Part shown: piece after piece, positions 5,701 through 30,859 of the stretch
Layout: each line of letters opens with the position of its first letter
Position numbering within the stretch: the stretch's first letter is position 1
IMG/VR virus record: IMGVR_UViG_3300009181_000033
Location: 124,001 to 188,000 of that record
DNA length: 64,000 nt
Strand: one strand, 5' to 3'
Translations under genes and position numbers: made by a program
The notes under the pieces: model-generated
What the model was told of the DNA's origin: nothing
Seen by the model: the letters and a program-made list of their open reading frames with translations, nothing else
The model's database searches: none

Positions 5701-6532
5701 AAGTGGAAACATCAATTTAACTGGTGCCACAATAAACCTTGGAGCACTCTCCAAAGTTAACGTTGGAACCTACGATTTGATATCGTATACTGGAATCTTG
5801 ACAGGTACGCCCGGGTTCATTTCTGGCAGCGGGATATCACAGGCTTCTTTGAATTTGTCAACAAATCCTAAAAAAGTACAAGCAATCGTAACAAGAGGCT
5901 ATATTGATGCCAACTGGTTCTGGAACTGTACCAGCTCGGGGGCGGGAACGTTGGTCCAAAGAACTGACGGTTCTGTTCAAATGACAAACGCAGGCACTTC
6001 CTCAACGTGGATGTATACGGGAAGTGGTGCCGGCGTTGGTGCAAAAACCTTGACGATGAAGTTTTATTTACCACAAGGTGCACAACTTGCAGGAGGGTCT
6101 GGCTCGAGCCTCATCATCGGTCTTGCAATAGGAAATTCATCAACAGCTGTCTGCAGGGTTTTCGGAATTAACGTCAATAGTATCAACTGGACATATGGAT
6201 GGTATTTAAGGGGTTATGACCTTGGGATGTCAAGAATAATAGGTTCCGATCAGGGAAATTCAACAGACTCTTGGAATAGACCGTCAAGTTCACCTGTATG
6301 GTTGAAGTGCATTGATAATGGGACGACAACGACGTTCCACATGTCATTTGATGGAGTTAATTACACTCAAAAATTCTCTTTGGCAAATTCAACCTGGTCT
6401 GCCGATACAACGAACGGCATTCCAGGAAACAACAATGCGGATTTGTTCGGAATATCACTGAATGTTTCAAACATAAGTTATGATACCAGCAGAGGTCCAA
6501 TAGTCACTCAATTCGATATAACCAGACCATAA
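2747..6532 (+). CDS. Putative receptor-binding/adhesin protein: autotransporter-associated beta-strand repeats, YVTN-like beta-propeller and a C-terminal beta-sandwich
   Basis: Repeats LTKLGGAQL, LTKRGQGDL, ITKLGTGTF, LNKDGTGNL; blades such as IAISPNGAKAY and ISISPDGTRLFV; no signal peptide or beta-barrel recognised. Confidence 0.7.
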   Translation: MINHRRKRNGVVYYWTNGSGTLDTTTANVKLNKPGGTSTTYPNSTAASASKTLRIATSAGTMTLNQATNIGKLYNDLTTGQNTIISGNKLNFTGGGGTISTAAGGTLTINSDITSDAALNVIGEDVVVVNGTRTDSQGTNLIGGTYVLNSANAIGTAGPISFGGGTLQYTENNSTDYSSRFSTNPGQQYKFSPTSYNISFANRLTSPNSTLTKLGGAQLFLISGSVCSGTVNVNGGALQIGRGEVTAHMPNVSSYAVSSGARLALNYSGSKNLSPSEFNVTGAGILDFVGPGQINMSGSFSHTGGTWVSSGTLVLSSSNALGTTGNISCPNSKGFIKHTQFNTVDYSPRIATNSTICVDVVDQNIDWNSNISGLYLTKRGQGDLKINGTTTSLGSMSIQNGSVMFKGSSLGDVDLGTIALLYGESTCNQIAISPNGAKAYCPKDGGLNIVDTNTGELIKSISISNCSFSFIKINSTGTKVYLAQRQDLSGNAGTKIYVVDTSTYQVTSMTCSSYPAALELSSNDNFLYVMMDNPTNKIESFNVGTGVKISSVSIRNPWGKYISISPDGTRLFVPLYRVSGPAWTGVNIVTVDPMTGVVSSTYDYRESFASSLALSGQLLALNSTSFYYVANDCTIRLFTIDAGGEYTDNIVVQSPFDTSFSLRTSWKNNNGTFTIVCNRTSRNFVCTISPTLNKLVDSCSVKADISHGYYDGQKYFLAASSGDYFILKPQTCSLIIDNNSAATNSSNTQIGGLGGKITKLGTGTFTQQASDNTISSLNVLSGTYVLNGSPSSIGMFKDGINVASGSTLGLANYGLRNLSGTLILSGSGFNNSGSLKNVSGDSSITGSIILAQNSRINCDLGNLFITSSITGSGNSLTVGGAGNVTIGGANLANGVLNKDGTGNLTLVANNVISGTINVLTGTLTAISSSGFGSTTSGIILNPGTVFDLSNLKTMTPVTKGFLTGSNATLMFDASSPIGTNSRLAISGNINLTGATINLGALSKVNVGTYDLISYTGILTGTPGFISGSGISQASLNLSTNPKKVQAIVTRGYIDANWFWNCTSSGAGTLVQRTDGSVQMTNAGTSSTWMYTGSGAGVGAKTLTMKFYLPQGAQLAGGSGSSLIIGLAIGNSSTAVCRVFGINVNSINWTYGWYLRGYDLGMSRIIGSDQGNSTDSWNRPSSSPVWLKCIDNGTTTTFHMSFDGVNYTQKFSLANSTWSADTTNGIPGNNNADLFGISLNVSNISYDTSRGPIVTQFDITRP

Positions 6533-6549
6533 CACTAAAGGAGAATAAA

Positions 6550-7101
6550 ATGTCAGTAAATTGGTACAAAGGAAATGAAAGTGGATACCTAAGGGTGTAT
6601 GGTGTTGGTCCCATGGGGCCTTCTGGATCGCAAGGTCCTGCAGGTCCTCAAGGGCCGGCCGGACCGGATGGTTTTCAAGGTGGGGACGGCAATCCAGGAC
6701 CCACAGGGTTCTCTGGCTCTGCAGGATCTTCAATATACGATCTTTTTTCTCAGGTCGACGGAAACCTGGGACCGGGTGAAATTTTCTTCAAATTCCCCGT
6801 GGGAAGATCTTTCACTTTGTCGACAACCGGCTCACAACACGCCGCGCGTTGCGTGACTGCGGCGACGACGTCACCGGCAGTCATAACGATATCAAAAATA
6901 CCCTCAGGGTCAACAACGTCGCAAACATTTGCGACCTGCAACTTTGGGGTGAGCTCAACGACAGGAACGTTCACGATACAGGATGTGACCAAGGCTAGCT
7001 TCGTCTGGGGAGATACGCTGACAATAACAGCGCCTAATCCTGCGAATGCAGCCTTGGCCGATGTAATGATATCGCTCAGGGGATCTACAAATCAACTTTA
7101 G
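6550..7101 (+). CDS. Short collagen-like fibre/adaptor protein (paralog of 2194..2730)
   Basis: G-X-Y run then HAARC...GDTLTITAP...ALADVMISLRG; AAGGAG RBS. Confidence 0.75.
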   Translation: MSVNWYKGNESGYLRVYGVGPMGPSGSQGPAGPQGPAGPDGFQGGDGNPGPTGFSGSAGSSIYDLFSQVDGNLGPGEIFFKFPVGRSFTLSTTGSQHAARCVTAATTSPAVITISKIPSGSTTSQTFATCNFGVSSTTGTFTIQDVTKASFVWGDTLTITAPNPANAALADVMISLRGSTNQL

Positions 7102-7126: not shown

Positions 7127-7804
7127 TCATTCACTTGAGCGCGGTGAGCTTTTTTCCATAAATGATTTTATTTTATCTTTATGGATGAAAAATGAGAGAA
7201 GGGGAGAGCCGGGCATCACATAGGAGCATATGCCAACCAGCTTGCCTTCGTCATCGAATGCTCCCCCACCTGAATTGCCCATCCACGCCGGTGAAGATAT
7301 TTGAATGTGTTTGGTTTCTTTTTTGAAATTGTATCTACTGGCAGAAACTACGCCCTCGATGAACGTCCACCAGAGTCCATTCGTGTGACCGACTATGTTT
7401 ACATGTTGACCGTCCCATACTTCTTCCGTCAGTAATGCGACGGGGTGTTCTGGTGGATTAAGGGCAATGAGAAGAGCAAGGTCCTGAACAGGGTCTGATT
7501 GCAAGATATGGGCAATTTTTATCTTGCCTTTCCTGTCTCCAATGTCAATGTACATCACCACATTATCTATTTTCTTGTCGTCGACGCAATGTTCGGCGGT
7601 CAAGATCTTATCGCTCCCAACCCAGACTCCTGAACAATAAGGCATCATTTTATCCTGAAGGTCATCCAGATCAGGGATCACCAAAGCGACTGTTGTCCTC
7701 TTTAGTGTGTCAACAAAGTTCTTCTTCGGATTCACAGGCTTAAAAGGTGCACAGGTTGTCAAACCAAACAATATGAAAAACATCATGGCAAACGAAACCC
7801 TCAT
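7127..7804 (-). CDS. Exported trypsin-like (S1) serine protease
   Basis: LTAEHC, DLALL and GNSGG triad motifs; hydrophobic N-terminus ending LTTC; AGGAGG RBS before ATG at 7804. Confidence 0.85.
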   Translation of the reverse strand: MRVSFAMMFFILFGLTTCAPFKPVNPKKNFVDTLKRTTVALVIPDLDDLQDKMMPYCSGVWVGSDKILTAEHCVDDKKIDNVVMYIDIGDRKGKIKIAHILQSDPVQDLALLIALNPPEHPVALLTEEVWDGQHVNIVGHTNGLWWTFIEGVVSASRYNFKKETKHIQISSPAWMGNSGGGAFDDEGKLVGICSYVMPGSPLLSFFIHKDKIKSFMEKSSPRSSE

Positions 7805-8002
7805 AAAACCTCCTGAATTCACATGCGAATTAAAAATAACTATTGTGCTAAATCAACCACCCAAAATCACAAATGATTTTTTTGGAAAAACTCGACTACA
7901 ATCCGTTTTTCAGCGCATGAAATAATTGATGTCATCAATACTTAAAATCTCCTTGGTCAACCAACCTTGTGTGGAGCAAGGGTTTCTGCAAGAAAGACAA
8001 AG

Positions 8003-8848
8003 ATGAAAATAATCACAGTTGGCAATGGCTTTGTGGCAAGTCATCTGCCATATCAGGTTTCCAGAGTTCGCTTCGACAATGGAGTTAAATCAATTTCCAA
8101 ATTTTTGGAAAAAAACAAGCCAGATGTTGTGATCAACTGTGTGGGGAAAACAGGTCGACCCAATATGGATTGGTGTGAAATAAACAAAGGAGAGACCACG
8201 ATTGCCAACGTCGCCCTGCCTGTTTTGTTGGCGCAGGAATGTGCTAAGAAATCTATTCGCATGATTCACGTTGGTTCCGGTTGCATATTTTACGGAAGCT
8301 CCCCATACGTTGAAACAGCAGCAATGACCAGGGCAATTACAAAGGATCATGGATGGAGGGAGACTGACATCGCAAATCCACAATCACACTATTCCAAAAC
8401 AAAATATGCTTGTGATTTGGCAATTGGCGGGATGGAAAACGTGACCATTTTGAGGATTAGGATGCCAATATCGAAAAAGAATCATCCAAGAAATCTCATC
8501 ACTGAATTACGCGGATACAATAAAGTAATCAACGTTCCAAATTCCATGACTTTCATGGATGACTTTGTCAGGTGCGTTGATTGGATTGTCAGCGGCAACA
8601 AAACTGGAATCTATCACGTCACAAATCCAGGGGTCATAACAGCTGCTCAAATCATGGGAGAGTACAAAAAACATAACGCCGATCATGCTTTTTCTATGAT
8701 CAATGAAGAACAATTGACTGGGCTAACGATCGCAAAGAGGTCGAATTGTGTGCTGGACTCTTCTAAATTAAAAGGAGAAGGCTTTGAAATGACGCCTGCG
8801 TCAGACGCCCTTAAGGACTGCATGATCGACTACGTCAGGAATGTTTGA
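8003..8848 (+). CDS. NDP-4-keto-6-deoxysugar epimerase/reductase (RmlD/NRS-ER-like SDR)
   Basis: GNGFVA Rossmann motif, GKTGRPNMDWCE, YSKTK (YxxxK), LRIRMPI. Confidence 0.8.
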   Translation: MKIITVGNGFVASHLPYQVSRVRFDNGVKSISKFLEKNKPDVVINCVGKTGRPNMDWCEINKGETTIANVALPVLLAQECAKKSIRMIHVGSGCIFYGSSPYVETAAMTRAITKDHGWRETDIANPQSHYSKTKYACDLAIGGMENVTILRIRMPISKKNHPRNLITELRGYNKVINVPNSMTFMDDFVRCVDWIVSGNKTGIYHVTNPGVITAAQIMGEYKKHNADHAFSMINEEQLTGLTIAKRSNCVLDSSKLKGEGFEMTPASDALKDCMIDYVRNV

Positions 8849-9064
8849 ATTTTCTTCCCGCTTCATCTTTTCTTCCTTCCAAGGACAGTGTCGGCACCTG
8901 CCATTGCAGCAATATCCTCTACGAAAATGATATGCCTCGGTGAACACCATTCGACCACCCGGCTCCCTGTAGTAATCCACACCTTCAACTATCTTCGGTC
9001 TAGGCTCTATTTTCACGTCAAACATTTTAATTAACCCCCAGAGACTTTTAAGGTCAACAGTCAT
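8801..9064 (-). CDS. Small Cys-rich protein (DUF5522-like)
   Basis: VFTEAYHFRRGYCCNGRCRHCPW motif. Confidence 0.7.
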   Translation of the reverse strand: MTVDLKSLWGLIKMFDVKIEPRPKIVEGVDYYREPGGRMVFTEAYHFRRGYCCNGRCRHCPWKEEKMKREENSNIPDVVDHAVLKGV

Positions 9065-9090: not shown

Positions 9091-9621
9091 CTAGTCTTCT
9101 TTGTTGCCGGCGTACTTCACACCCATAATAGTTCCGAGTATTGAAAAGGAATTGGTGAGCAGAATTCCTGTGAGAGAAGCCCACACAGTGCCTACTCTCT
9201 CAACCTCCCTATTTTTTATGAGAGCAAAAACATAGACGGCAGTTGCAACAAAGCCGACGGCTGCAACAACTCCGATTGCGAGGTTGACTATTCTGCGCAT
9301 CATGTGAAATTGATTTTTCTTTTGAAGCAATTCAAGGTCCTGCATAACAACTTTCTTTGCATTTTCAGCATCAAAAAGTGCGGACTTCAATTTTTCCTGA
9401 ATGTCCAAAAGCACCCTGTTTTTGGACTGAAGCTCCTTCATTATTTCGAGCCTCTTTTTTCTGGAATCCTGATCTCTTTCTATCGATTCCTTTATGTAAT
9501 CGATGAACTGAATGTCACCGCATTCAACATCGATCGCTTTGAGAATTGCACCTTCTAACCTGACGCCCTTCTGCTCCGCGAGCTCGATCAGCGATGTTTG
9601 GGCATCTTGTGAAAACTTCAT
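9091..9621 (-). CDS. Coiled-coil protein with two C-terminal transmembrane helices, coupled to the response regulator
   Basis: ATGA overlap with the upstream gene; two hydrophobic segments at the C-terminus. Confidence 0.7.
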   Translation of the reverse strand: MKFSQDAQTSLIELAEQKGVRLEGAILKAIDVECGDIQFIDYIKESIERDQDSRKKRLEIMKELQSKNRVLLDIQEKLKSALFDAENAKKVVMQDLELLQKKNQFHMMRRIVNLAIGVVAAVGFVATAVYVFALIKNREVERVGTVWASLTGILLTNSFSILGTIMGVKYAGNKED

Positions 9622-10052
9622 GCATACACCTTGAAGGGGACTATTTTGTTCTTATAGCCATCATAGTCAAGTTTAAATTTTTCAAGACGAGGTTCTATGT
9701 CGTCTGATTTCACTATCCAAAACTGTGCCCCCGCAAGCATTGCTTTGTTGATCTCCCTTTTGTCTGATGAAGAAGAAATGATGCCGATTACCACTCCATT
9801 CCCATAAACGTGATTTATTCTTCTCACCAATTCTATTCCATCAACTGAAGATCCGACAAGATTAAGATCAACAAAAACGCAATCAGGTTTCTTCATCTCC
9901 CCGGCTTGCCATTTTTGGCATAGACGCTCTGCTTCCTCGGCAGAATTGACTGTCATAAGATGAAGAGTGATATCGAGCAAATTACATACATCTTCAAATA
10001 CAAGATGAAATAAATTTTCATCATCTACTAAGAGGAGCGAATCGATTAACAT
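9618..10052 (-). CDS. Stand-alone response regulator receiver domain
   Basis: LLVDDE, phospho-acceptor FVDLNL, ISSS, conserved Lys in IVKS; no output domain. Confidence 0.9.
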   Translation of the reverse strand: MLIDSLLLVDDENLFHLVFEDVCNLLDITLHLMTVNSAEEAERLCQKWQAGEMKKPDCVFVDLNLVGSSVDGIELVRRINHVYGNGVVIGIISSSSDKREINKAMLAGAQFWIVKSDDIEPRLEKFKLDYDGYKNKIVPFKVYA

Positions 10053-11635
10053 TTGAGCCTTACCTTAAGCAAAGTGCCTTGTTGTAGTGTTTCACATGAA
10101 ATATTGAAACCATGTTCATTTAGGATGGCAACACAAATGGAAAGACCAAGACCAGTGCCAGTTTCCTTCTGGCCTGCCCGACGCATATAAGGCTGAGAAT
10201 ATCTCATGAAATCCTCCTGAGACATGCCCCTGCCGTTATCTTGGATGCCGAGTGTGTTTTCATCAACCATAAATATGCGCACACATTTCGTTGGTGAATC
10301 ATTATATTTTAATCCATTGCGAATTAAATTATCTATCGCTGTGCAGAACAAAGACTCATTCACTTTTGCGTAAGAAAGCTGATCCACAGTAACTTGGTCC
10401 CTGTAAGCGATTAGACTTAAATAATCCATTAGCATCTTCCTTAAGTCACATCGTTCAATCTCTAAGGCCTTATCTTCCCTGACTAGGCTGGTGAACTCTT
10501 TGACGCCTTTGTAGACGCGCTGTGTATGTGCCAGACCTTCTTTCAGTAATTTTATTGGTGATTCTAGCTTGTATTTTTCAATGACTTCCTTGGGCAAACG
10601 TCGCTCTAAAGACGTAACGCCACGTGGCATATAGGTGTTGATCCCGCTGTGCATGTCATGTCGCAGAATTTTTGCGGCGTGTTCGAGATATGAATTCTTT
10701 TTGTTAAGTTCCTTTATTGACTCAACAATTTGTGTCACATCCTGGCGAACTGAGGAGTAACCCGTCAAATTTCCATTGGTGGGATTAAAGTGTGCCTTGA
10801 TGTATGTGTCGACATAATGAAGCCTTCCATTTTTTGACTTATTGGTCACCACTGCATGCCACACCTCACCCTCGTGTACCGTGGTGTGATACATGTCTTC
10901 CCAAAAATCTTTAGTGTGAAGGCCCGAGCTGACCACACTGTGATCCTTGCCTATCAAGTCTGACAATTTCCAGCCTGAAACATCAACAAATTTCTTGTTG
11001 GCATAGGTGATCTTTCCTTCTGCGTCTGCCTTTGAAAATAAAGTTGCCTGATCGACAAGTTCATTTTGTTCAACAAGGCCCTCTATCTCGAGTAGTTTTT
11101 TCTCGAGGCTTATTCCTTCCTTTACGGAATGTGCCATGGAATAGAGCGGGGCGAGGAGCTTTGCAAAATTAACTTCCTCCCTTGTCCAAATCCTTGGTTT
11201 GTAACTTTCTATGCAAATAACGCCCAAAACATTTCTGTGATAAATTATTGGAACATCCAACATTGACTTGACGCCTGAAGGATGAAGGTAATCTTGCACG
11301 AGGCACGACGTAGCTGGATGATGCTCGGCATCGTCAGCAACAATGACGGGGTCCACCGAGAGAAAATGAAAATAAGGCAAATATTTCCTCACTTCAATTT
11401 CATCACCTTGCCGAAAGCAATTTTCATTTTTGACGTACATTTGTTCGCATTCTATCGAACTCTTGTTTTTAGTGTACAGCCAAACGGAGGCTCTGTCGAT
11501 TTGTAGGACATGAGCAACTTCCTTGGTTAGAATCTTTGACCCTTCCGATGTTTTTCCTTCGTAAAATAGCTTATTTTGTGATTGACATACCAACAAGTCA
11601 GTCAGTTTGTTTTTGTAGCTTTTTGTAGGAGACAT
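10046..11635 (-). CDS. Cytoplasmic GAF-PAS sensor histidine kinase
   Basis: GAF (SMLDVPI...GVICIE), PAS (ITYANKKF...GEVWH), H-box LRHD, N-box DNLIRNGLKY, G1 DNGRG, G2 GTGLGL. Confidence 0.92.
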   Translation of the reverse strand: MSPTKSYKNKLTDLLVCQSQNKLFYEGKTSEGSKILTKEVAHVLQIDRASVWLYTKNKSSIECEQMYVKNENCFRQGDEIEVRKYLPYFHFLSVDPVIVADDAEHHPATSCLVQDYLHPSGVKSMLDVPIIYHRNVLGVICIESYKPRIWTREEVNFAKLLAPLYSMAHSVKEGISLEKKLLEIEGLVEQNELVDQATLFSKADAEGKITYANKKFVDVSGWKLSDLIGKDHSVVSSGLHTKDFWEDMYHTTVHEGEVWHAVVTNKSKNGRLHYVDTYIKAHFNPTNGNLTGYSSVRQDVTQIVESIKELNKKNSYLEHAAKILRHDMHSGINTYMPRGVTSLERRLPKEVIEKYKLESPIKLLKEGLAHTQRVYKGVKEFTSLVREDKALEIERCDLRKMLMDYLSLIAYRDQVTVDQLSYAKVNESLFCTAIDNLIRNGLKYNDSPTKCVRIFMVDENTLGIQDNGRGMSQEDFMRYSQPYMRRAGQKETGTGLGLSICVAILNEHGFNISCETLQQGTLLKVRLKC

Positions 11636-11678: not shown

Positions 11679-11936
11679 TCACTGATCCTCAAACCAAGCT
11701 ATTGAGGCCAATGCTGCATCCACATCTGAAGAACCACCCCTCTGCGCCGCTATGGTGAGGGTATCGCCTGACGGTGACCCGGTGTTATTTGGAATGGAAC
11801 CATAGACAAATGAACCTTGTGCCGCTGGTGTCATGTTTGAAACGAGAGCGGTGCCAAATGGACCAGTTGAATTGGAATTTGTTCCGCCTCCATTTCCTGA
11901 TGCGCCTTTTTTTCCCAATGAAGTAAATCCTGACAT
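11679..11936 (-). CDS. Small Gly/Ser-rich hypothetical protein, possibly an internally deleted virion gene
   Basis: 85-aa ORF preceded by ATAGTTA. Confidence 0.5.
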   Translation of the reverse strand: MSGFTSLGKKGASGNGGGTNSNSTGPFGTALVSNMTPAAQGSFVYGSIPNNTGSPSGDTLTIAAQRGGSSDVDAALASIAWFEDQ

Positions 11937-11940
11937 GTTC

Positions 11941-11971
11941 TTAACTATTGTCTCAGGTCAACAATAGTTAA
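11941..11971. promoter_or_regulatory. Back-to-back ACAATAGTTAA motifs (candidate divergent late promoters)
   Basis: Perfect 11-bp inverted repeat, 11941-11951 and 11961-11971, each a few nt upstream of a divergent ATG. Confidence 0.6.
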
Positions 11972-12412: not shown

Positions 12413-12733
12413 ATGTCACTAGAATTAATAGATGATAGTTCGTATGAAGCTGTCATTAGGACAAGCGGTTTTGTAATAATCCAATTTGGGGCAACGTGGT
12501 GCGGTCCTTGCAAGTTAATATCTCCAATATTGCATGAATTATCGGACAAAAGAAGAGATGTGAAATTTTGTAAAGTAGACATCGATGAATCACCAATTTC
12601 TTCGTCGAAGATGAACATAAGAGCAGTGCCAACCGTAATCATTTACAAAGACGGAGCTGAAGTGAAAAGGGAAGTGGGCTCAATGTCAAAAAACAGACTA
12701 GAACAACTAATTAGCTACTGTTCGAACAACTAA
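12413..12733 (+). CDS. trxA: Thioredoxin
   Basis: WCGPC active site, KVDID, AVPT. Confidence 0.95.
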   Translation: MSLELIDDSSYEAVIRTSGFVIIQFGATWCGPCKLISPILHELSDKRRDVKFCKVDIDESPISSSKMNIRAVPTVIIYKDGAEVKREVGSMSKNRLEQLISYCSNN

Positions 12734-14832: not shown

Positions 14833-17800
14833 TTATGTGTTGTTTGCCAAATACAACAACACTGATTGTAATATGACATCTGTATTAGTTAATGGTGTTG
14901 TAGAGCCCGCAATTGAACTACTTATAATGAGGGAACCAGTGATCTGAACACTAGAGTTCTCAATTCTCAAAATATCACTACGAAGTGAATTGTCATCGCC
15001 AGTTCCATTGCCAATTACAAAGAGCGAGAAGTCATTTCCTCTTTGATTGTACTTGCCCAGAACAGTCTGACCACTACCAGAGGCTATCGTATAGATGCCA
15101 CCAGCAAATGAGTAGGTGCCACTGGCAACAGTGTTCTGTCCTTGAGCATGTGAGTAATTGGCACTGCCCGTTGTAAACAATCCTTCAGCATGTGATCCAA
15201 CACCCAAGGCAAGAGTATTTTGACCTTCAGCATGTGATCTGGAACCTGAAGATGTTGTCCCACTTCCCTCAGCATGGGAGTATTGACCTGACGCAGTCGT
15301 GCTGAGCCCTTCTGCATGTGCTCCTTGGTTTGACGCAGTTGTTGTCTGACCTTCAGCATGGGAGCGGTTACCTGATGCTGTTGTTTGGTATCCTTCGGCA
15401 TGGGAGTATTGACCTGATGCTGTACTGCCATTGCCTTCTGCATGGGAATAGATTCCTGATGCTGTTGTTTGGTATCCTTCGGTGTGGGATGCAACACCTG
15501 ATGCTATGCTTCCATTGCCTTCTGCATGGGAGTATTGACCTGATGCTGTACTGCCATTTCCTTCTGCATGGGAATAATCGTTACTTCCTATTGTGTAATA
15601 TCCTTCTGCATGTGATGCATACCCTGATGCAAGTGATCCTTCACCTTCTGCGTGTGCATAATCAAAAGATCCCGTTGTACGTGTACCTTGAGCGTGAGAA
15701 TATGGACCTGAAGCTAGGCTGAAGGCACCTTCTGCGTGGGCTCCGCTGTTGGTCGCACTTGTTAGATAACCTTCAGCATGAGAACCTTGCCCTGATGCTG
15801 TTGTTAAGACACCTTCAGCATGAGCTCCGGTGTTGCTTGCCGAAGAAGATGAACCTTCCGCGTGGGAATATTGACCGGTAGCAATGTTGTTTGAATTGCC
15901 CTGAGCTAGTGAACCCGTTATCTCGAGACGGTCGAAGCCAACAGAAACTCCTCGCTCGATTCTTACAACATCTCTTCTGGATGCATCTGCATCACCAGTG
16001 CCTGTTCCAATCACAAAGAGAGATGTATTATTATTTCTTTTATTATATCCACCAAAAACTGTCTGTCCACTGCCAGAGGCTATCGTATAGATGCCACCAG
16101 CAAATGAGTAGGTGCCACTGGCGACAGTGTTCTGTCCTTGAGCATGTGAGTAATCGGCACTGCCTGTTGCAAACAATCCTTCAGCATGTGATCCAACACC
16201 CAAGGCAAGAGTATTTTCACCTTCTGCATGTGAACCATTTCCTAGCACAGTTGTTGAAATACCTTCAGCATGAGAATAATTGCTCTGAACAGTGGACTCA
16301 TATCCTTGGGAAAAAGAACCCAATCCCAATGTTTTGCTCGAAGGCCTTCCTACAGACAGAGAGCCACTGATTACAACGTCACCACCAAACAAAGATTTTC
16401 TATTGCCAGCATCAGATCCAGACAATGATCCACTAACATAGAAAAACACATCTGTTCCTTTTTGAATAGGAGAATCAATGCTTTCACTCCCTCTTATGGC
16501 AACTGAGCCAGTCGCATAAATAGAACCATTGGTTGTGCTAGAAAAATACTGGGAAGCAGCTGGTGCAGCGATTGTAACAGAACCGTTAGAACCCGAAGTA
16601 ATTGTTATATTCGTCCCAGCAACAAGATATGAAGTGCCGTCAGAGAGGTGAGTTAAAGAGCCCGATAATCCCTGCGGAAATTTTGTTTGCCCAGATAAAG
16701 TGTTCGTTCCTAAGACATTTCCAACATTTAATGCTGTAGATGCCCCACCTGCAAAATTAACTGTCGTTGCATTTGCGTTAATTACGTTAAACGTTGTAGA
16801 AGTTGTGGTAATCGCATTGTTATTTACCGCCAAATCACCTGCTAACGTCAAATCCTGTATCGACTTGGTGTTCTTCCAATTGTCTGTCGCAGAACTGTAT
16901 ACTAAAAGATCACCATTCGCAAGAGTTGAAAGAGCAACATCACCCAACTGACTTAGTTTGACAGGTATTGTTCCTTGTCCAGATGAACTCACACCACCAA
17001 CCAACCTAAATAAACCTGCTTGCTTTATTGATGATTTTGCCGCGTCTGTTAAAGACGTACAATCCTGGGCCACGACAATATGTGCACAAAGAATACCATT
17101 AATTGCCGTGTTAGGTGCCTCAGTAAATGCCTCAGTACCAACACCATTTTCAGCATCAATAAGTGTTTGATAAGACTTATTTCCGTAATATACTATAAAC
17201 GCATTTGTTGGTGAGTTGGGAATCCAAAACACCCTTTGAATTGAAAATTCATTGTTAGGAACATTTACAAGCGTCCCATTTCCATTAACATATTTCGTCG
17301 GATCTAGAACCGTATAACCGGCATTTGCAACACCGGTATTAACAACCGGCGTAGAACCCGACATGTAATATCGATAAATCTTTGAAACCGTTATTGGGTT
17401 TGATTCTATGACCGTAGAGGGGTGATTTGGATTAATGGTGTAATTGGCACCCGCCTTATAAGCACTACCAGCAGTTTTGGTAATTGATAATGTTGAACCA
17501 GACGCCTCGATGGTGTGTCCTGATATCTTTAAGGGTCCAAAGGCACGTATAAAATCATCATTTTGTTGATCTAAACCATAAGAAATTTGAGGTGAATTAA
17601 AAACACCATTAGAAACATTTCCTGAAAGGTGCAAAACAACCCCTAAATTAATGGCAGTATCCCACTGGGTTATATCTAAAGATCCCCAAGGCGTAGGTTG
17701 TTGTATGATTTGACCCGTATTATCTATGCCAACATACGTAATCTTTGCAGACGCGGAATACAACAGTGATATGTTAGATGTTGTCGGCCATTGTACGTAT

Positions 17801-19923
17801 TTGATTGTTGGGTACGGTGCAGAACTAGTTGATGCATTCATTGAAACAATAATGCCTTCACCACCCAACACACCAAAAGTAGTTCCTCCCAGAGACGTAG
17901 ACAAGATTCCTCCGTGGAGAAGGCCTGTGCTTAACGTACTTTCCAACCAACGAAGTCGAGTTGTGTTAGTAAAATCAGTTCCCGGCGCATACTGGGTAAA
18001 GTACATGTCATTGGTGGAACCCGAAGTATAAATGTAAGATGCACTTTGGTTCGTTGGAATTCTAAGAGATCCTACTGGTTTCATCTGAAAATAGTCAGAT
18101 ACACCAAATGCGCCTGATATGAAAGTATCACCACCAAATAATATTGACGGTTGATCTGCCCCTAATGTTGAAAGTGCACCGGAAACATAAAAAGATGTAT
18201 TAGGATTAATATCAAAAGGTGAATCAATTCCTGTTTTGTTTCCTATGAATGCAGCAGATCCTGTAGTGAATATCGAGCCGGCTGTTGTGCTCGTGAAAAA
18301 AGAATCGCCTGTAATCCCTTGATATCCTTGGACTCCTGTTATTCCTTGAGCTCCCTGAACTCCTTGGGTACCTTGAAAACCTTGATTTCCTTGGTTTCCT
18401 TGGGTGCCCTGGCTGCCTTGATTACCTTGAAAACCTTGAAAACCTTGAGAACCTTGTATGCCTTGGTCTCCTTGGGCTCCTTGGGTGCCCTGAGAACCGA
18501 TCATCCCCTGGAAGCCTTGGGTGCCTTGGAAGCCTTGAGAACCCTGTGAGCCTTGGAAGCCTTGAGAGCCCTGTGAGCCTTGGTCACCCTGTAAACCTTG
18601 GTCGCCTTGGAAGCCTTGGTCACCCTGTAAACCTTGGTCGCCTTGGAAGCCTTGGTCACCCTGTGAACCTTGGTCGCCTTGGTTACCTTGGAAGCCTTGG
18701 TCACCCTGTGAACCTTGATCGCCTTGGAAGCCTTGTCCTTGGAAGCCTTGAGAACCCTGTGAACCTTGGTCACCTTGGAAGCCTTGGTCACCTTGGAAGC
18801 CTTGTCCTTGGAAGCCTTGGTCACCCTGTGAACCTTGATCACCTTGGAAGCCTTGGTCGCCTTGGAAGCCTTGAGAACCTTGGAAGCCTTGAGAACCTTG
18901 GTCACCTTGTGAACCTTGGAAGCCTTGAGAGCCTTGGTCACCTTGTGAACCTTGGAAGCCTTGTCCTTGGAAGCCTTGGTCACCTTGTGAACCTTGGAAG
19001 CCTTGGTCGCCTTGTGAACCTTGGAAGCCTTGTCCTTGGAAGCCTTGGTCACCTTGTGAGCCTTGATCGCCTTGGAAGCCTTGGTCACCTTGTGAGCCTT
19101 GATCGCCTTGGAAGCCTTGAGAACCCTGTGAACCTTGGTCACCTTGGAAGCCTTGGTCACCTTGGAAACCTTGGAAGCCTTGGTCGCCCTGTGAACCTTG
19201 GAAGCCTTGAGAGCCCTGTGAGCCTTGGAAGCCTTGGAAGCCTTGAGAGCCTTGGTCACCTTGGAAGCCTTGAGAACCCTGGTCGCCCTGTGAACCTTGG
19301 TCGCCTTGGTCACCCTTCAGGCCCTGGGTCCCCTGGAATCCCTGGTTTCCTTGTGATCCTACTTCACCTTGAGGCCCTTGGGCTCCTTGATGTCCCTGGA
19401 ACCCTTGGTCTCCCTTCGAGCCTTGGAAGCCTTGGTCACCCTTGAAACCCTGAAATCCTTGGTCTCCCTTTAGGCCCTGATAGCCTTGGTCACCCTTCAA
19501 TCCCTGATAACCCTGGTGACCCTGGTTACCTTGATGGCCTTGGAGACCCTGGAGACCTTGGAGACCTTGGAGACCTTGGTAACCTTGTGTTCCTTGAACA
19601 CCTTGATAGCCTTGTGCACCTTGATAGCCTGCACCTTGGGCACCTTGATACCCTTGTTCTCCTTGAAAACCTTGTGTGCCTTGTTGACCCTGTGGCCCAA
19701 AATCACCAATATCACCTTGATATCCTTGGTAGCCTTGATATCCTTGGTAGCCTTGATATCCTTGGTAACCTTGATATCCTTGGTAACCTTGGGCTCCTTG
19801 GGCTCCTTGGGCTCCTTGGGCTCCTTGGGCTCCTTGGGCCCCTTGGGCTCCTGAACCGCCGCCATGTCCGCTAGCTCTAATTACGATTGAGCCATTTCCT
19901 TGTCCCGAAAATGAAACGGTCAT
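14833..19923 (-). CDS. Long collagen-like tail fibre/adhesin with YadA-like head repeats
   Basis: About 515 aa of G-X-Q triplets, a globular middle region, then many 14-aa ASGxxSHAEG repeats; AGGAGA RBS before ATG at 19923. Confidence 0.85.
15065..15237. repeat. Direct repeat copy 1 (173 bp) within the fibre gene
   Basis: Near-identical to 16061-16233 at a 996-nt offset. Confidence 0.85.
16061..16233. repeat. Direct repeat copy 2 (173 bp) within the fibre gene
   Basis: Near-identical to 15065-15237. Confidence 0.85.
18304..19851 (-). repeat. 9-bp-period coding tandem repeat (collagen G-X-Q)
   Basis: Units such as ccttggaag, ccttggtca and ccttgggct encode GFQ, GDQ and GAQ. Confidence 0.95.
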
Positions 19924-20019
19924 GGTGTCTCCTGTAAACAAGCATCAAAAAGAAACAAAGTATTAGGCATATCATCGTTAAATATTCGCCAACAGCAGAA
20001 AAAGACAAATTATAAATGT

Positions 20020-21526: not shown

Positions 21527-21729
21527 GTTCTCTCCAAGAATAAATCGTCATTTACTCCATTTAGTTCGATTAAGGCGGACTCCAAATGCACCTGTAATCT
21601 ATAAGATCCTTTTTTTGTCCACATGACGACCCAAGAATCTGGTTCATCAGATTCTTGGATAATGACACCAATGTTTCTGGAATCAGGTTCCCATCTAGAA
21701 GATTTTATGACCAATGAACCAGGGTTCAT
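21511..21729 (-). CDS. Small hypothetical protein (KOW/SH3-like)
   Basis: PGSLV...IGVII...VVMW pattern; overlaps the groEL stop. Confidence 0.5.
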   Translation of the reverse strand: MNPGSLVIKSSRWEPDSRNIGVIIQESDEPDSWVVMWTKKGSYRLQVHLESALIELNGVNDDLFLERTCTSK

Positions 21730-23357
21730 CGTGAAGAATTATTTTCCTCTACAATCACAGCATCAAGAGATAAGAATGTTGAAGCAACAGAGGCTGCGTT
21801 CTTCAGGGCTGTCCTAGTTACTTTGACAGGATCTATCACGCCAGTTTCAATTAAATTTTGATATTCAAATGTAGAAGCGTTCCAGCCAGTTAGCTCACCT
21901 GAGTCTCTACGCCTATTCAATTCGTTGATTATAACGTCCTTGCTTTGTCCTGCGTTTTCAGATATTCTGCTGATCGGAGCGACACAAGCATCCAATATAA
22001 CCTTAGCCCCCAAACCGAATTGGTCAACTGAATTTATCTTTCCAGATGACAATTTTCTCCAAACCTCAAATAAAGCCATGCCTCCACCTTGAACTATTCC
22101 TTCATCGACAGCAGCTCGTGTTGCATGAAGAGCATCTTCGATGCGATACTTCCTTTCAATCATTTCTACTTCAGTTGAGCCGCCGACCTTAATCAAAGCC
22201 ACACCAGAAGAAAGTTTGGCTATTCTGGTTTTTAATTTTGTTACTTCATCAAGTGTTAAGGAAATGTCACGCAATTGTGTTTTTAGCTCCAATGTGTGTC
22301 GATCGACATTTTCCTTAGTGGAACCAGAAGAAACCAAAGTACAGTTATCTCTTGTGACGACGACCTTCTTCAATGTGCCAAGGTCAGCTAGTGTTACTTG
22401 TTGCATCTTCACACCTGTGGAGGCTGAAACTATCTTTGCATCTGTCAAGATGCTAATGTCCCTCAAAAGATCATCCTTGTGTTGGCCGTAACCTGGTGAT
22501 TTGATTGCAACAACAGGAAGCGCACCATTGACTCTGTTAACAACAAGTCCTTGAAGGGCTTCACCCTCAACGTCGTCAGCGATAATGAGAAGCGGTGTCT
22601 TTGACTGTGATATCTTTTCGAGAAGAGGAATCATTTCCCTCATGCTGCTGATTTTATGATCAGTCAGCAAAACTCTTACATCGCTATAGGCTGCGTGCAT
22701 CTTCTCTGGATTTGTCACAAAGTAAGGAGAAAGATATCCTCTCTCAAATTGCATTCCCTCGACGAGATCCAAACTGGTCGACATTCCTTTTGCGTCTTCA
22801 ACTGTGATGATTCCATCATTGCCGACTTTTGTCATTGCATCAGCAATCAATTCACCAATTTTTCTATCTCCATTTGCTGAGATAGTTGCAATTTGGGCTA
22901 TTTCTTCTGTCGACGTTAATTGCTTTGCTTCTTCTTTCAAGAGCTGCAAGGCTACATTTAAAGTTTTTTCTATGCCGTCACAAAGTTCTTCTGCATCATA
23001 GCCTGCTTCTAATAACTTCATGCCAGATTTCACCATGGCATGTGTCAAAACGGTTGACGTCGTTGTTCCATCACCTGCAATGTCATTTGTTTGTTCAGCA
23101 GCTTGTCTAATTAGCTGAGCTCCCATTCTCTCGATTGGATCTTTTAATCTAATTGACTTGCTAACTGTCACTCCGTCCTTAGTGACAATGGGTGATGAAT
23201 TTTCATCTTGTTGTATGAGAACAGTCTTGCCTTTAGGACCAAGGGTACAACCAACAGCATTAGCTACTATTTCAACACCCTTAAACAAAGATTTTCTTGC
23301 ATCAGTTGAAAAAACAACACGTGTTGTAGAAGGCAATTTAGTTTCATGTTCAATCAT
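21726..23357 (-). CDS. groEL: Chaperonin GroEL
   Basis: TLGPKG, TKDGVTV, AGDGTTT, EGMQFERGYLSPYF, GVIDPVKVTR; lacks the GGM tail. Confidence 0.97.
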   Translation of the reverse strand: MIEHETKLPSTTRVVFSTDARKSLFKGVEIVANAVGCTLGPKGKTVLIQQDENSSPIVTKDGVTVSKSIRLKDPIERMGAQLIRQAAEQTNDIAGDGTTTSTVLTHAMVKSGMKLLEAGYDAEELCDGIEKTLNVALQLLKEEAKQLTSTEEIAQIATISANGDRKIGELIADAMTKVGNDGIITVEDAKGMSTSLDLVEGMQFERGYLSPYFVTNPEKMHAAYSDVRVLLTDHKISSMREMIPLLEKISQSKTPLLIIADDVEGEALQGLVVNRVNGALPVVAIKSPGYGQHKDDLLRDISILTDAKIVSASTGVKMQQVTLADLGTLKKVVVTRDNCTLVSSGSTKENVDRHTLELKTQLRDISLTLDEVTKLKTRIAKLSSGVALIKVGGSTEVEMIERKYRIEDALHATRAAVDEGIVQGGGMALFEVWRKLSSGKINSVDQFGLGAKVILDACVAPISRISENAGQSKDVIINELNRRRDSGELTGWNASTFEYQNLIETGVIDPVKVTRTALKNAASVASTFLSLDAVIVEENNSSR

Positions 23358-28232: not shown

Positions 28233-28314
28233 GTAATAATAGTAAACAACTTAACAAGATATTTGCACTCACAAAAACAAATAACTCTTCTTGGATTATA
28301 GTTAATAATTGAGT

Positions 28315-29490: not shown

Positions 29491-29503
29491 ACAGGAGTGC
29501 AAA

Positions 29504-30823: not shown

Positions 30824-30859
30824 AAACCAAATATATATTTTATAATATCAAGAGGAACA

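What the first reader, a model, noticed from the sequence alone, without database searches (positions are those of the whole stretch)
9091..11635. Complete phage-encoded two-component cassette: GAF-PAS kinase, receiver-only regulator and membrane protein
Seen: three overlapping genes with intact phosphorelay motifs. The regulator has no output domain, and the third gene encodes a coiled coil with two TM helices. Established: such systems are bacterial sensory modules and are uncommon in phages. Inference: the phage senses a cytoplasmic cue (redox, light or metabolite) and signals through the membrane protein, for example to time lysis or exclude superinfection, or it cross-talks with host signalling.
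Basis: partly seen in the sequence, partly recalled or inferred. Interest (0 to 1): 0.65.

Follow-up and report, generated by a model that had tools for sequence, protein, structure and literature searches.

The report
Conserved phage two-component lysis-linked signalling cassette
A 298-kb T4-like jumbo phage carries an intact sensor kinase, a stand-alone receiver and a virus-only membrane protein, a trio conserved in hundreds of uncultured phages and often placed beside their lysis genes, so these phages probably sense host redox or energy state to control events at the cell membrane such as lysis timing.

Summary
Three overlapping minus-strand genes encode a GAF-PAS histidine kinase (10046-11635), a receiver-only regulator (9618-10052) and a coiled-coil protein with two TM helices (MP, 9091-9621). 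All phosphorelay motifs are intact.

It is not a stray host fragment. The genome is a complete T4-like jumbo phage. The membrane protein family is virus-only and is encoded on at least 399 IMG/VR contigs. The same gene order held in 81 of 85 loci examined.

The trio stays 41-65% identical between phages whose capsid proteins are only 25-28% identical.

The PAS domain belongs to the FAD-binding Aer/MmoS redox class and keeps the flavin-pocket residues.

Natural domain swaps suggest how it works. PAS or GAF sensors fused directly to the MP coiled coil and TM hairpin sit at the head of holin/endolysin cassettes. The MP N-domain fused to a second kinase sits after the receiver in rare bacterial copies.

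An endolysin lies within about 4 kb in 25 of 52 non-redundant loci, but not in this genome.

Best reading: redox-sensing kinase, then receiver, then MP N-domain, then TM hairpin that modulates lysis. Expression, phosphotransfer and binding are untested. Receiver-MP docking got weak support only.

The parts
10046..11635 (-). Soluble sensor histidine kinase, 529 aa: GAF, FAD-type PAS, divergent HisKA-like DHp, HATPase_c
   Evidence: ORF. Pfam GAF, PAS and HATPase_c. It holds the only HATPase_c match in the whole phage genome. No TM-like segment, unlike 40 of 52 family members.
11138..11533 (-). GAF domain (aa 35-166), ligand unknown; three cysteines conserved among the GAF-bearing orthologues
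   Evidence: Pfam GAF E 4.3e-16. Conserved in 14 GAF-type phage kinases, with no Cys-His chromophore motif. Weak matches to phytochrome/cyanobacteriochrome GAFs, E about 1e-4.
10700..11038 (-). PAS domain (aa 200-312) of the FAD-binding Aer/MmoS/NifL redox-sensor class
   Evidence: phmmer: MmoS 3ewk E 2.4e-19, Aer 8dik E 3.1e-15, NifL 2gj3 E 3e-5. The profile of three orthologues gives E 1.1e-27. H232, M248/Y249, N265 and R297 align with Aer H53, M69/W70, N85 and R115.
10436..10699 (-). DHp region with an invariant H-box (YLEHAAKILRHDMHSGINTY); predicted phospho-acceptor H326 (codon 10658-10660)
   Evidence: Invariant in 47 kinases. RHDMHSGI aligns with SHDIKEPL of solved kinase 8f71. None of the 47 kinases hits a Pfam HisKA model.
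10052..10351 (-). HATPase_c catalytic domain (aa 429-528) with N, G1 and G2 boxes
   Evidence: Pfam E 9.4e-14. Invariant N436, N440, D466, G468, G470, G495, G497.
9618..10052 (-). Stand-alone receiver (144 aa) with a conserved 25-aa C-terminal tail; phospho-acceptor D62 (codon 9867-9869)
   Evidence: Pfam Response_reg only. It is the only receiver in the genome. D10, D11, D62, S94, W112 and K115 are invariant, and mean column identity is 80% over 52 orthologues.
9472..9621 (-). MP N-terminal cytoplasmic domain (aa 1-50, LEG motif), proposed docking/input module for the receiver
   Evidence: Conserved. The same domain is fused to HisKA-HATPase_c in the MP slot after HK and RR in bacterial copies. 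39% identity to that fusion. RR + MP(1-110) complex: weak support, 0.33 against a best control of 0.00.
9307..9471 (-). MP basic RKKRLE stretch and coiled coil (aa 51-105); its length varies by 35-40 aa among orthologues
   Evidence: Alignment A5. Continuous helix 37-136 in the model.
9106..9306 (-). MP TM hairpin (aa 106-172) with invariant TM2 motif ILLTNxFSIxGTIMGVK (contains GxxxG); proposed membrane effector
   Evidence: Invariant columns. Hydropathy. The same coiled coil plus hairpin is fused to PAS-PAS or GAF sensors at the head of lysis cassettes.
11679..11936 (-). 85-aa Gly/Ser-rich ORF 43 nt upstream of the kinase, possibly the first gene of the transcription unit
   Evidence: ORF. 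No Pfam, PHROG or PADLOC hit. Not conserved next to the trio elsewhere.
8801..9064 (-). DUF5522 Cys-rich 87-aa ORF 26 nt downstream of the MP, possibly co-transcribed
   Evidence: Pfam DUF5522 E 9.5e-18. Not conserved next to the trio elsewhere.
11941..11971 (.). Perfect 11-bp inverted repeat with a 9-nt loop, 4 nt upstream of the 85-aa ORF in the divergent intergenic region; candidate operator or hairpin
   Evidence: Read directly from the sequence. Function untested.

Best explanation
This is a functional, self-contained, phage-lineage signalling module, not host debris.

Proposed mechanism:
1. The soluble kinase reads the infected cell's redox/respiratory state through a flavin-type PAS domain, plus an unknown GAF ligand.
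2. It autophosphorylates on H326 and passes the phosphate to D62 of the stand-alone receiver.
3. The phosphorylated receiver has no DNA-binding output. It acts by protein contact on the N-terminal domain of the co-translated membrane protein.
4. That signal travels down the coiled coil to an invariant two-helix membrane hairpin, which is the effector.
5. The hairpin most likely modulates holin-dependent lysis (antiholin-like or accessory-holin role), so that lysis timing follows host energy state.

Shown: intact motifs, conservation, gene coupling, domain swaps, neighbourhood statistics.
Inferred: flavin binding, phosphotransfer, receiver-MP contact, and the lysis role.

My sub-confidences: real conserved phage TCS 0.9; MP is the receiver's output partner 0.55; output concerns lysis timing 0.35-0.4.
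For: Conservation:
- HK-RR-MP order in 81 of 85 loci. RR/MP junction of 1 or 4 nt overlap in 38 of 52 non-redundant loci, and 0-11 nt gap in 10 more.
- At least 399 viral contigs carry the MP. Only 3 MAG contigs among 185,579 species genomes do, and one of these shares 13 of its 18 genes with this phage.
- The MP profile finds only 258 clusters among 1.84 billion representatives. Atlas look-alikes are 100% viral.
- Trio identity is 41-65% where capsid identity is 25-28%.

Parts:
- One HATPase_c and one receiver in the genome, so a cognate pair.
- Motifs invariant. H326 aligns to a solved H-box.
- PAS matches MmoS at 2.4e-19 and Aer at 3e-15, with H/N/R pocket residues kept.

Domain swaps:
- PAS-PAS-coiled coil-hairpin and GAF-coiled coil-hairpin proteins lack HK and RR and precede holin-like or spanin-like genes and endolysins.
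- N-domain-coiled coil-HisKA-HATPase_c occupies the MP slot with its start overlapping the RR stop.

Lysis link:
- An endolysin lies within about 4 kb in 25 of 52 loci, adjacent in 12, in several orientations.
- A holin-like family 6 gene sits directly between the trio and the endolysin, or directly after the MP.
- A patatin phospholipase is inserted in the operon in one clade.

Docking: RR + MP(1-110) complex, median ipSAE 0.33 (runs 0.33, 0.30, 0.42) against a best control of 0.00. Runs agree in at least 90% of contacts and partner pLDDT is at least 83. The mark was reached by 58 of 80 solved complexes and 2 of 110 mismatches, but at 0.60 or under by only 7 of those 80 and by both mismatches. 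This is weak support only.
Against: - In the window's own genome the trio is not near lysis genes: the only lysozyme-like hit is about 90 kb away, and no holin-like family 6 homologue was found.
- The MP hits no holin, Pfam or PHROG model and has no significant structural match.
- Endolysin proximity could partly reflect shared ancestry of loci or a common variable region rather than function.
- 40 of 52 orthologous kinases have N-terminal TM-like segments. In one lineage a rhodopsin sits next to the MP. Both facts also fit the MP as an input or accessory sensor.
- The complex score is a weak pass.
- No expression data, and no promoter-based inference on timing.
- Flavin binding, phosphotransfer and binding are all unmeasured.
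Confidence: 0.45

Rival explanations
1. The membrane protein is an input, not an output. It would be a membrane-embedded accessory sensor or transducer that reports membrane state (potential, lipid damage, or a partner such as a rhodopsin) to the kinase. The receiver's true target would lie elsewhere, in a host or another phage protein.
For: 40 of 52 orthologous kinases have 1-2 N-terminal TM-like segments, and about 10 have no soluble sensor, like intramembrane-sensing kinases that rely on accessory membrane proteins (my own knowledge of LiaFS and BceS). A 7-TM rhodopsin with the retinal Lys lies directly upstream of the MP in L066, recalling the sensory rhodopsin-transducer-CheA-CheY arrangement. 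TM2 is invariant. The N-domain is fused upstream of a kinase core, the position sensor domains normally occupy.
Against: The window's kinase, and those in L002, L003 and L005, have no TM-like segment yet keep the MP. Sensor-hairpin fusions without any kinase or receiver make the hairpin a terminal output. The MP is coupled to the receiver gene, not to the kinase gene. There is weak positive RR-MP docking.
Confidence: 0.2
2. The receiver mainly acts on host machinery. It could be a CheY-like effector or a phosphate sink that rewires host two-component or motility signalling during takeover. The membrane protein would have an independent role.
For: The receiver is the most conserved part (80% mean column identity), as expected if it must fit a conserved external partner. 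It is a single-domain CheY-like protein.
Against: The phages carrying it have very divergent capsid proteins (25-62% identity), although their hosts are unknown. An unchanging host target across such divergent phages seems unlikely. The MP is retained and translationally coupled almost universally. Bacterial copies replace the MP hairpin with a kinase but keep the N-domain right after the receiver.
Confidence: 0.12
3. The module controls a membrane function other than lysis, for example superinfection exclusion, control of membrane potential or transport during infection, or defence against competing phages.
For: The effector is membrane-embedded. In this genome the trio is not linked to lysis genes. 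Other inserted or neighbouring genes are membrane or signalling proteins: a rhodopsin, a 4-TM protein, and an ankyrin-cyclase-like protein.
Against: No PADLOC defence model matches convincingly. The only recurrent neighbours are lysis genes. Both one-component fusions sit in lysis cassettes.
Confidence: 0.15
4. The trio is a recent, non-functional fragment captured from a host genome.
For: Two-component systems are typically bacterial. Rare bacterial contigs carry a related cassette.
Against: It is conserved with intact motifs on hundreds of viral contigs. The MP family is virus-only. Only 1 of 301 genomes sampled from the order of the bacterial carrier has the receiver. In that bacterial contig the cassette GC is below the flanks, which suggests transfer into the bacterium.
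Confidence: 0.02

Closest known systems
LytSR two-component system controlling the holin-like and antiholin-like CidA/LrgA proteins in Staphylococcus (my own knowledge, not tested here)
   Same: A two-component system that reads membrane or energy state and governs small membrane proteins which control murein-hydrolase access and cell lysis.
   Different: LytS is a multi-TM kinase and LytR a LytTR DNA-binding regulator that acts on transcription. Here the receiver has no DNA-binding domain, the proposed control is post-translational through a coiled-coil membrane protein, and the system is phage-encoded. No homology was detected between the MP and Cid/Lrg (no Pfam hit).
T4 lysis inhibition: antiholins RI/RIII acting on holin T (PMC11413866 and PMC8385771, listed)
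   Same: A T4-type phage adjusts lysis timing in response to a sensed signal through a protein that modulates the holin.
   Different: RI is periplasmic and binds holin T directly on superinfection, with no phosphorelay. Here the proposed sensor is a cytoplasmic flavin-PAS kinase with a receiver. No sequence relationship was found.
Aer, MmoS and NifL FAD-binding PAS redox sensors (PDB 8DIK, 3EWK, 2GJ3; PMC9668731)
   Same: The PAS domain is a clear sequence relative (E 2.4e-19 and 3e-15). It keeps the His, Asn and Arg flavin-pocket residues that Aer and MmoS share.
   Different: Aer W70 is Tyr here and Aer R57 is Ser. The downstream partners differ entirely. Flavin binding has not been measured.
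Single-domain response regulators that control other signalling proteins by contact, such as CheY-FliM and DivK-DivL/PleC (my own knowledge)
   Same: A receiver-only protein whose output must be a protein-protein interaction. The bacterial variant places a kinase with the MP N-domain directly after the receiver, as in DivK-type control of kinases.
   Different: The docking domain (MP N-domain) is a new, unannotated family. The target is a membrane hairpin rather than a motor or a cell-cycle kinase.
Sensory rhodopsin II-HtrII-CheA-CheY (my own knowledge)
   Same: A 2-TM coiled-coil membrane protein working with a kinase and a stand-alone receiver. In one phage lineage a rhodopsin gene sits next to the MP.
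   Different: The MP has no HAMP or MCP signalling domain. Its coiled coil is N-terminal to the TM hairpin. The kinase is HisKA-like, not CheA. The rhodopsin occurs on only two contigs.
Other reported phage-encoded kinases: the pelagiphage curli (T8SS) cluster HK and adenylate cyclase (PMC9599517), and Alteromonas phage V22 CDS-30 HK/CheY-like (PMC7289586)
   Same: Sensor-kinase genes carried by marine phages and treated as auxiliary signalling genes.
   Different: Those reports describe no receiver plus membrane-protein trio. tblastn with this RR and MP found no match in 50,697 GenBank phage records.

Membership tests
Classical two-component system (HisKA-type kinase + receiver) | Kinase ATP-binding domain with N, G1 and G2 boxes | tested here: met
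   Pfam HATPase_c E 9.4e-14. N436, N440, D466, G468, G470, G495 and G497 are invariant in 47 orthologues.
Classical two-component system (HisKA-type kinase + receiver) | DHp helix with an H-box phospho-acceptor histidine | tested here: met
   H326 in RHDMHSGI aligns with SHDIKEPL of solved kinase 8f71 and is invariant.
Classical two-component system (HisKA-type kinase + receiver) | Match to the Pfam HisKA (PF00512) model | tested here: not met
   None of the 47 kinases hits any HisKA model at E <= 0.001. The DHp is a divergent subtype, so I file it as HisKA-like by alignment only.
Classical two-component system (HisKA-type kinase + receiver) | Receiver with acidic pair, phospho-Asp, Ser/Thr and Lys | tested here: met
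   D10, D11, D62, S94 and K115 are invariant. Pfam Response_reg E 1.3e-11.
Classical two-component system (HisKA-type kinase + receiver) | Phosphotransfer from the kinase to the receiver | not testable with these tools
   Needs a biochemical assay. Cognacy is inferred from adjacency and from each being the only copy in the genome.
FAD-binding PAS redox sensors (Aer/MmoS/NifL) | Significant sequence similarity to solved members | tested here: met
   3ewk E 2.4e-19; 8dik E 3.1e-15; 2gj3 E 3e-5.
FAD-binding PAS redox sensors (Aer/MmoS/NifL) | Flavin-pocket residues (Aer H53, N85, R115; M69/W70) | tested here: met
   H232, N265, R297 and M248 are conserved. W70 is replaced by Y249, and R57 by Ser (MmoS also lacks Arg at that position).
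FAD-binding PAS redox sensors (Aer/MmoS/NifL) | Bound FAD cofactor | not testable with these tools
   Needs purification and spectroscopy.
Phytochrome / cyanobacteriochrome GAF photoreceptors | Chromophore-binding Cys-His motif in the GAF | tested here: not met
   The conserved motif is AT.CF (Cys followed by Phe or Leu), and PDB matches are only about 1e-4.
LOV blue-light PAS domains | Conserved adduct-forming cysteine (NCRFL-type motif) | tested here: not met
   By my reading of the alignments the corresponding segment is GKDHSVVSSG, with no Cys. The best matches are FAD redox sensors rather than LOV domains.
Phage holins | Match to a known holin family model | tested here: not met
   The MP has no Pfam or PHROG hit and no structural match. 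I do not file it as a holin.
Phage holins | Small membrane protein encoded next to the endolysin | tested here: inconclusive
   An endolysin lies within about 4 kb in 25 of 52 related loci, but not in this genome. The MP is larger than typical holins, and a separate holin-like family 6 gene exists in several loci.
Chemoreceptor / Htr transducers | HAMP and MCP signalling domains | tested here: not met
   No Pfam hit in the MP. Foldseek matches to chemoreceptors have E above 6.
Known anti-phage defence systems (PADLOC) | Match to a defence-system protein model | tested here: not met
   Only one marginal hit, E 0.0095, for the MP.

The most novel reading that the evidence does not exclude
A widespread, horizontally mobile, phage-specific phosphorelay acts as an energy-gated lysis clock. 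A flavin-PAS kinase reads the host's respiratory state and, through a stand-alone receiver, post-translationally switches a new class of membrane hairpin effector that sets when the holin fires. The same effector can be driven directly by fused PAS or GAF sensors, or in one lineage possibly by a phage rhodopsin. That would make it a modular family of signal-controlled lysis regulators in uncultured T4-like phages.
Probability: 0.3. Interest if true: 0.85.

Novelty: new variant of a known kind. Interest (0 to 1): 0.72.

Why it matters
Phages are usually thought to time lysis with a simple holin clock, or in T-even phages by sensing superinfection. This would be a full sensory phosphorelay with its own virus-only membrane effector, conserved better than the capsid protein across very divergent T4-like phages.

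If it works as proposed, many abundant aquatic phages actively read the physiological state of the infected cell and adjust a membrane event, probably lysis. That bears on burst size, virus-host dynamics and carbon release in natural waters.

It also defines a new protein family (the MP N-domain and hairpin), a non-transcriptional output for a two-component system, and a compact sensor-to-membrane switch that could be engineered.

It is directly testable with synthetic genes, although no cultured phage carrying it was found in GenBank.

Tried and rejected
- **Promoters and timing:** the sigma-70 and terminator scan was no better than shuffles. The T4 late-promoter motif TATAAATA is under-represented in this genome (6 sites on both strands, about 25 expected) and none was reported within about 6 kb of the operon. 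No timing inference is possible.
- **DNA and protein similarity to GenBank phages** for the trio: no match.
- **First single-sequence viral scan with the kinase:** no relative found. The MP query succeeded instead.
- **Foldseek against PDB with the MP model:** nothing at E <= 0.001.
- **PADLOC:** nothing convincing.
- **NCBIfam:** only generic kinase and receiver similarities far below cut-offs.
- **MAG genomes:** a gp23 search in the three MAG genomes carrying the MP found nothing. One contig was shown to be phage-like through shared genes instead.
- **Rhodopsin search in viral contigs:** only the two contigs already known, so it is a rarity.
- **N-domain search for further architectures:** only its own cluster plus ordinary MPs.
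- **Literature:** seven full-text searches found no description of this trio or of a phage two-component system controlling lysis. The library lacks many subscription papers, so absence is not proof.
- **Complex prediction:** the RR-MP result is a weak pass only, and I do not count it as evidence of binding.
- **Rejected ideas:** holin membership for the MP, phytochrome-type or LOV light sensing at this locus, and a recent host fragment.
- No contig that I took for human was met.
Full report
**Observation.**
- a 529-aa kinase (10046-11635);
- a 144-aa receiver (9618-10052);
- a 176-aa membrane protein, here MP (9091-9621).

The kinase stop overlaps the receiver start by 7 nt, and the receiver stop overlaps the MP start by 4 nt (ATGA). 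Pfam finds GAF (35-166), PAS (about 203-302) and HATPase_c (429-528) in the kinase. It finds only Response_reg in the receiver and nothing in the MP. PHROGs gives only unnamed or generic kinase families. All catalytic residues were checked codon by codon. An AlphaFold model of the MP, built on 52 orthologues (pLDDT 86), shows a small N-domain, one continuous helix 37-136 and a second helix 140-172. Hydropathy places two TM segments at 107-125 and 150-168.

**What the genome is.** The window is bases 124001-188000 of a 297,894-bp IMG/VR virus record with direct terminal repeats, rated 100% complete.
- It encodes a T4 gp23-type major capsid protein (Pfam Gp23, E 1e-64).
- Its nearest relatives by capsid are an uncultured huge phage (50%), Flavobacterium phage immuto (43%), Microcystis phage Mel-JY01 and Rhodothermus phage RM378.
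- The window also holds GroEL, collagen-like tail fibres and a PrkA-type kinase cassette.

So it is a far-T4-type jumbo myovirus. The kinase and the receiver are the only HATPase_c and Response_reg matches in the whole genome, which makes them a cognate pair.

**Conservation.**
- The MP is a large family: more than 5,000 proteins at 90% clustering and at least 399 IMG/VR contigs.
- Of 85 fetched loci holding an MP, 81 have kinase, receiver and MP in the same order and strand. Two of the four exceptions are cut by a contig end.
- Among 52 non-redundant loci, the receiver/MP junction is a 1- or 4-nt overlap in 38 and a 0-11 nt gap in 10 more.
- Mean column identity is 80% for the receiver and 52% for the MP. 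The MP's second TM helix (ILLTNxFSIxGTIMGVK) is invariant.
- The H-box region YLEHAAKILRHDMHSGINTY is invariant in 47 kinases.
- No GenBank phage has the receiver or the MP.
- Only three contigs in 185,579 species genomes have the MP, all MAGs from three different phyla. The best of them shares 13 of its 18 genes with this phage, including the PrkA cassette at 67-85% identity, so it is a mis-binned phage contig.
- An exhaustive profile search found only 258 clusters in 1.84 billion representatives, and Atlas look-alikes are 100% viral.
- Six of ten long contigs carrying the trio have a gp23 gene.

**The trio outlasts the capsid.** Against two phages whose capsid proteins are only 25-28% identical to this one's, the kinase core is 59-63% identical, the receiver 63-65% and the MP 41-43%. 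Flanking genes are almost never shared between loci. Either selection on the cassette is very strong, or it moves between T4-like lineages, or both.

**Inputs.**
- The sensor part of the kinase is modular. All 47 non-redundant kinases have HATPase_c, about 36 have PAS, 14 have GAF and about 10 have no recognisable soluble sensor.
- Forty of 52 have one or two N-terminal TM-like segments. The window's kinase has none, so it is a soluble variant.
- Its PAS domain matches the FAD-binding PAS-A of MmoS (3ewk, E 2.4e-19), the Aer PAS (8dik, E 3e-15) and NifL. A profile of three orthologues reaches E 1e-27.
- The Aer structure paper names H53, N85 and R115 as pocket residues shared with MmoS, and M69/W70 as contacts to FAD (PMC9668731). 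Through the HMMER alignment these correspond to H232, N265, R297 and M248/Y249 here.
- A flavin-based redox or energy signal is therefore the best-supported input. It is inferred, not measured.
- The GAF domain is conserved among the 14 GAF-type kinases and has three conserved cysteines. It lacks the phytochrome Cys-His motif, and by my reading of the alignments the PAS lacks a LOV cysteine, so light sensing is not supported at this locus.
- H326 aligns with the phospho-accepting histidine of a canonical H-box in solved kinase 8f71, although no Pfam HisKA model is matched.

**Domain swaps that suggest the wiring.** Among MP relatives, some proteins are about twice the normal length. They are real genes, with clusters of up to 8 members on contigs of up to 100 kb.

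| Architecture | Example | Context |
|---|---|---|
| PAS-PAS + MP coiled coil + hairpin | P0171 | Phage-like contig, no kinase or receiver; followed by a lipoprotein-like gene, a TM protein and a PG_binding_1 + GH19 endolysin |
| GAF + MP coiled coil + hairpin | P0150/P0275, 7 members | No kinase or receiver; followed by a 77-aa two-TM holin-like protein, a 64-aa ORF, a GH19 endolysin and a glucosaminidase |
| MP N-domain + coiled coil + HisKA + HATPase_c | P0242, P0257, P0260/P0282 | Exactly in the MP slot after a PAS kinase and a 143-aa receiver, start overlapping the receiver stop; bacterial-looking contexts |

For the third type, the bacterial-looking contexts hold T9SS-sorted proteins, a SusC-like receptor, CreD, HD and HAD, or AraC-type and YceI neighbours. 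The receiver there is 65% identical to the window's, the kinase has the identical H-box, and the N-domain is 39% identical. Only the cassette genes have viral homologues, and the cassette GC (36.6%) is below that of the flanks. Only 1 of 301 genomes sampled from that order has the receiver, which suggests sporadic transfer into bacteria.

Taken together, the hairpin behaves as a terminal output that can be driven by any upstream sensor through the coiled coil. The N-domain behaves as an input module that always follows the stand-alone receiver.

**Link to lysis.**
- The only recurrent neighbour of the trio is an endolysin: PG_binding_1 + GH19 (phrog_181, E 9e-68) or a T4-lysozyme type.
- It lies within about 4 kb in 25 of 52 non-redundant loci. 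It is directly adjacent in 12 and one gene away in 8, on either side and in either orientation.
- A small two-TM holin-like family (family 6) lies directly between the trio and the endolysin, or directly after the MP, in several loci. It includes the 77-aa protein of the GAF-hairpin cassette.
- One clade carries a patatin-like phospholipase between kinase and receiver. Another carries a 7-TM rhodopsin with the retinal lysine between receiver and MP. Another carries a 4-TM coiled-coil protein there.
- **Caveat for the window itself:** its only lysozyme-like hit is about 90 kb from the trio and no family 6 homologue was found. Its local neighbours are a DUF5522 protein, an RmlD-like enzyme, a trypsin-like protease and an unknown 85-aa ORF.

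**Docking test.** Receiver plus MP residues 1-110 gave a median ipSAE of 0.33 (runs 0.33, 0.30, 0.42) against a best control of 0.00. The runs agree in at least 90% of contacts and partner pLDDT is at least 83. The mark was reached by 58 of 80 solved complexes and 2 of 110 mismatched pairs, but at 0.60 or under by only 7 of those 80 and by both mismatches. The tool's verdict is weak support, and my own alignments were used. I treat it as compatible with binding, not as evidence.

**Mechanism and rivals.** My best reading has four steps: a redox/energy-sensing kinase phosphorylates the stand-alone receiver, which acts on the MP N-domain, and the signal passes down the coiled coil to the hairpin effector. 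That effector probably modulates holin-dependent lysis.

The main rival makes the MP an input or accessory sensor for the mostly membrane-anchored kinases. The rhodopsin neighbour and the N-domain-kinase fusions also fit that view. The hairpin-only one-component fusions and the soluble kinases that still keep an MP argue against it. Action on host targets, and a membrane role other than lysis, remain possible. A recent host fragment is excluded.

**Comparison and novelty.** Functionally the closest analogues are:
- LytSR with CidA/LrgA, and T4 lysis inhibition (lysis control);
- Aer and MmoS (input);
- CheY- or DivK-type single-domain receivers (output logic).

None is a homologue of the MP. 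Seven full-text searches and the papers I read describe phage kinases (PMC9599517, PMC7289586) and divergent receiver domains in jumbo phages (PMC7824862). None describes this trio or a phage phosphorelay tied to lysis. I rate it a new variant of a known kind: an ordinary phosphorelay core with a new, virus-only, non-transcriptional membrane output.

**Limits.** Nothing here shows expression, flavin binding, phosphotransfer, binding or a phenotype. Neighbourhood counts are not phylogenetically independent. Gene starts in related loci were set by my own ORF rules.

Noticed in passing
window 28309-32794 (+): A second signalling cassette: a SpoVR-like protein (phrog_19072), a phrog_35217 protein (unknown function; I took it for YeaH-like) and a PrkA/YeaG-type serine kinase (phrog_22605, E 2e-130). 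The kinase is 30-34% identical to Thermus phage and Ralstonia jumbo phage genes annotated as serine kinase, YeaG or AAA ATPase. The cassette is syntenic at 67-85% identity in the mis-binned MAG contig L086.
   Followed up: partly
L066 5412-5990 (also L070, L093, L094): A compact 192-aa 7-TM microbial rhodopsin (Pfam Bac_rhodopsin E 3.8e-12) with RYFDW..T in helix C and D-I-A-A-K in helix G. It is encoded between the receiver and the MP of the trio in a T4-like phage contig, and was found on only two contigs. No phage-borne rhodopsin turned up in my searches.
   Followed up: partly
L015 4597-5589 (same arrangement in L026 and L031): A patatin-like phospholipase (Pfam E 5e-20) inserted between the kinase and the receiver of the trio.
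   Followed up: no
L003 6577-8184; L004 6617-8218: An ankyrin-repeat protein with a weak adenylate/guanylate cyclase-like C-terminus lies directly downstream of the MP in two phage lineages.
   Followed up: no
L096, L105, L106 (about 6001-7050 or 10001-11050); L103 1567-2523: Bacterial-looking contigs (T9SS, SusC-like and AraC-type neighbours) carry kinase and receiver 45-65% identical to the phage ones. Their third gene fuses the MP N-domain to a second histidine kinase. Only 1 of 301 genomes sampled from that order has it.
   Followed up: yes
window 11941-11971: A perfect 11-bp inverted repeat (TTAACTATTGT, 9-nt loop, ACAATAGTTAA) lies 4 nt upstream of the 85-aa ORF in the divergent intergenic region that heads the minus-strand unit. 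It could be an operator or an RNA hairpin.
   Followed up: no
window 21726-23357 (-): A phage-encoded GroEL chaperonin (phrog_5725, E 2e-151), 43-46% identical to copies in GenBank phage records (Flavobacterium, Bacteroides and others).
   Followed up: partly
window 14833-19941 (-) and 6550-7101 (+): A 1702-aa collagen-repeat tail-fibre-like protein (phrog_6320, E 2e-123) and a smaller 183-aa Gly-X-Y repeat protein.
   Followed up: no
window 7127-7822 (-), 7967-8848 (+), 12413-12733 (+), 58263-60029 (-): Auxiliary genes around the trio: a trypsin-like protease with a hydrophobic N-terminus, an RmlD-like NAD-dependent sugar reductase or epimerase, a thioredoxin-like ORF with a WCGPC motif (by eye only), and a Nol/NodU-like carbamoyltransferase.
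   Followed up: no
whole genome G000: The T4 late-promoter consensus TATAAATA is under-represented (6 sites on both strands, about 25 expected), so this far-T4 phage probably uses a different late promoter.
   Followed up: partly
L027 2314-3576 and 4240-5577; L080 2560-4164 and 4161-5552: Some phages carry two tandem paralogous kinases upstream of a single receiver and MP, which suggests several inputs feeding one output.
   Followed up: no
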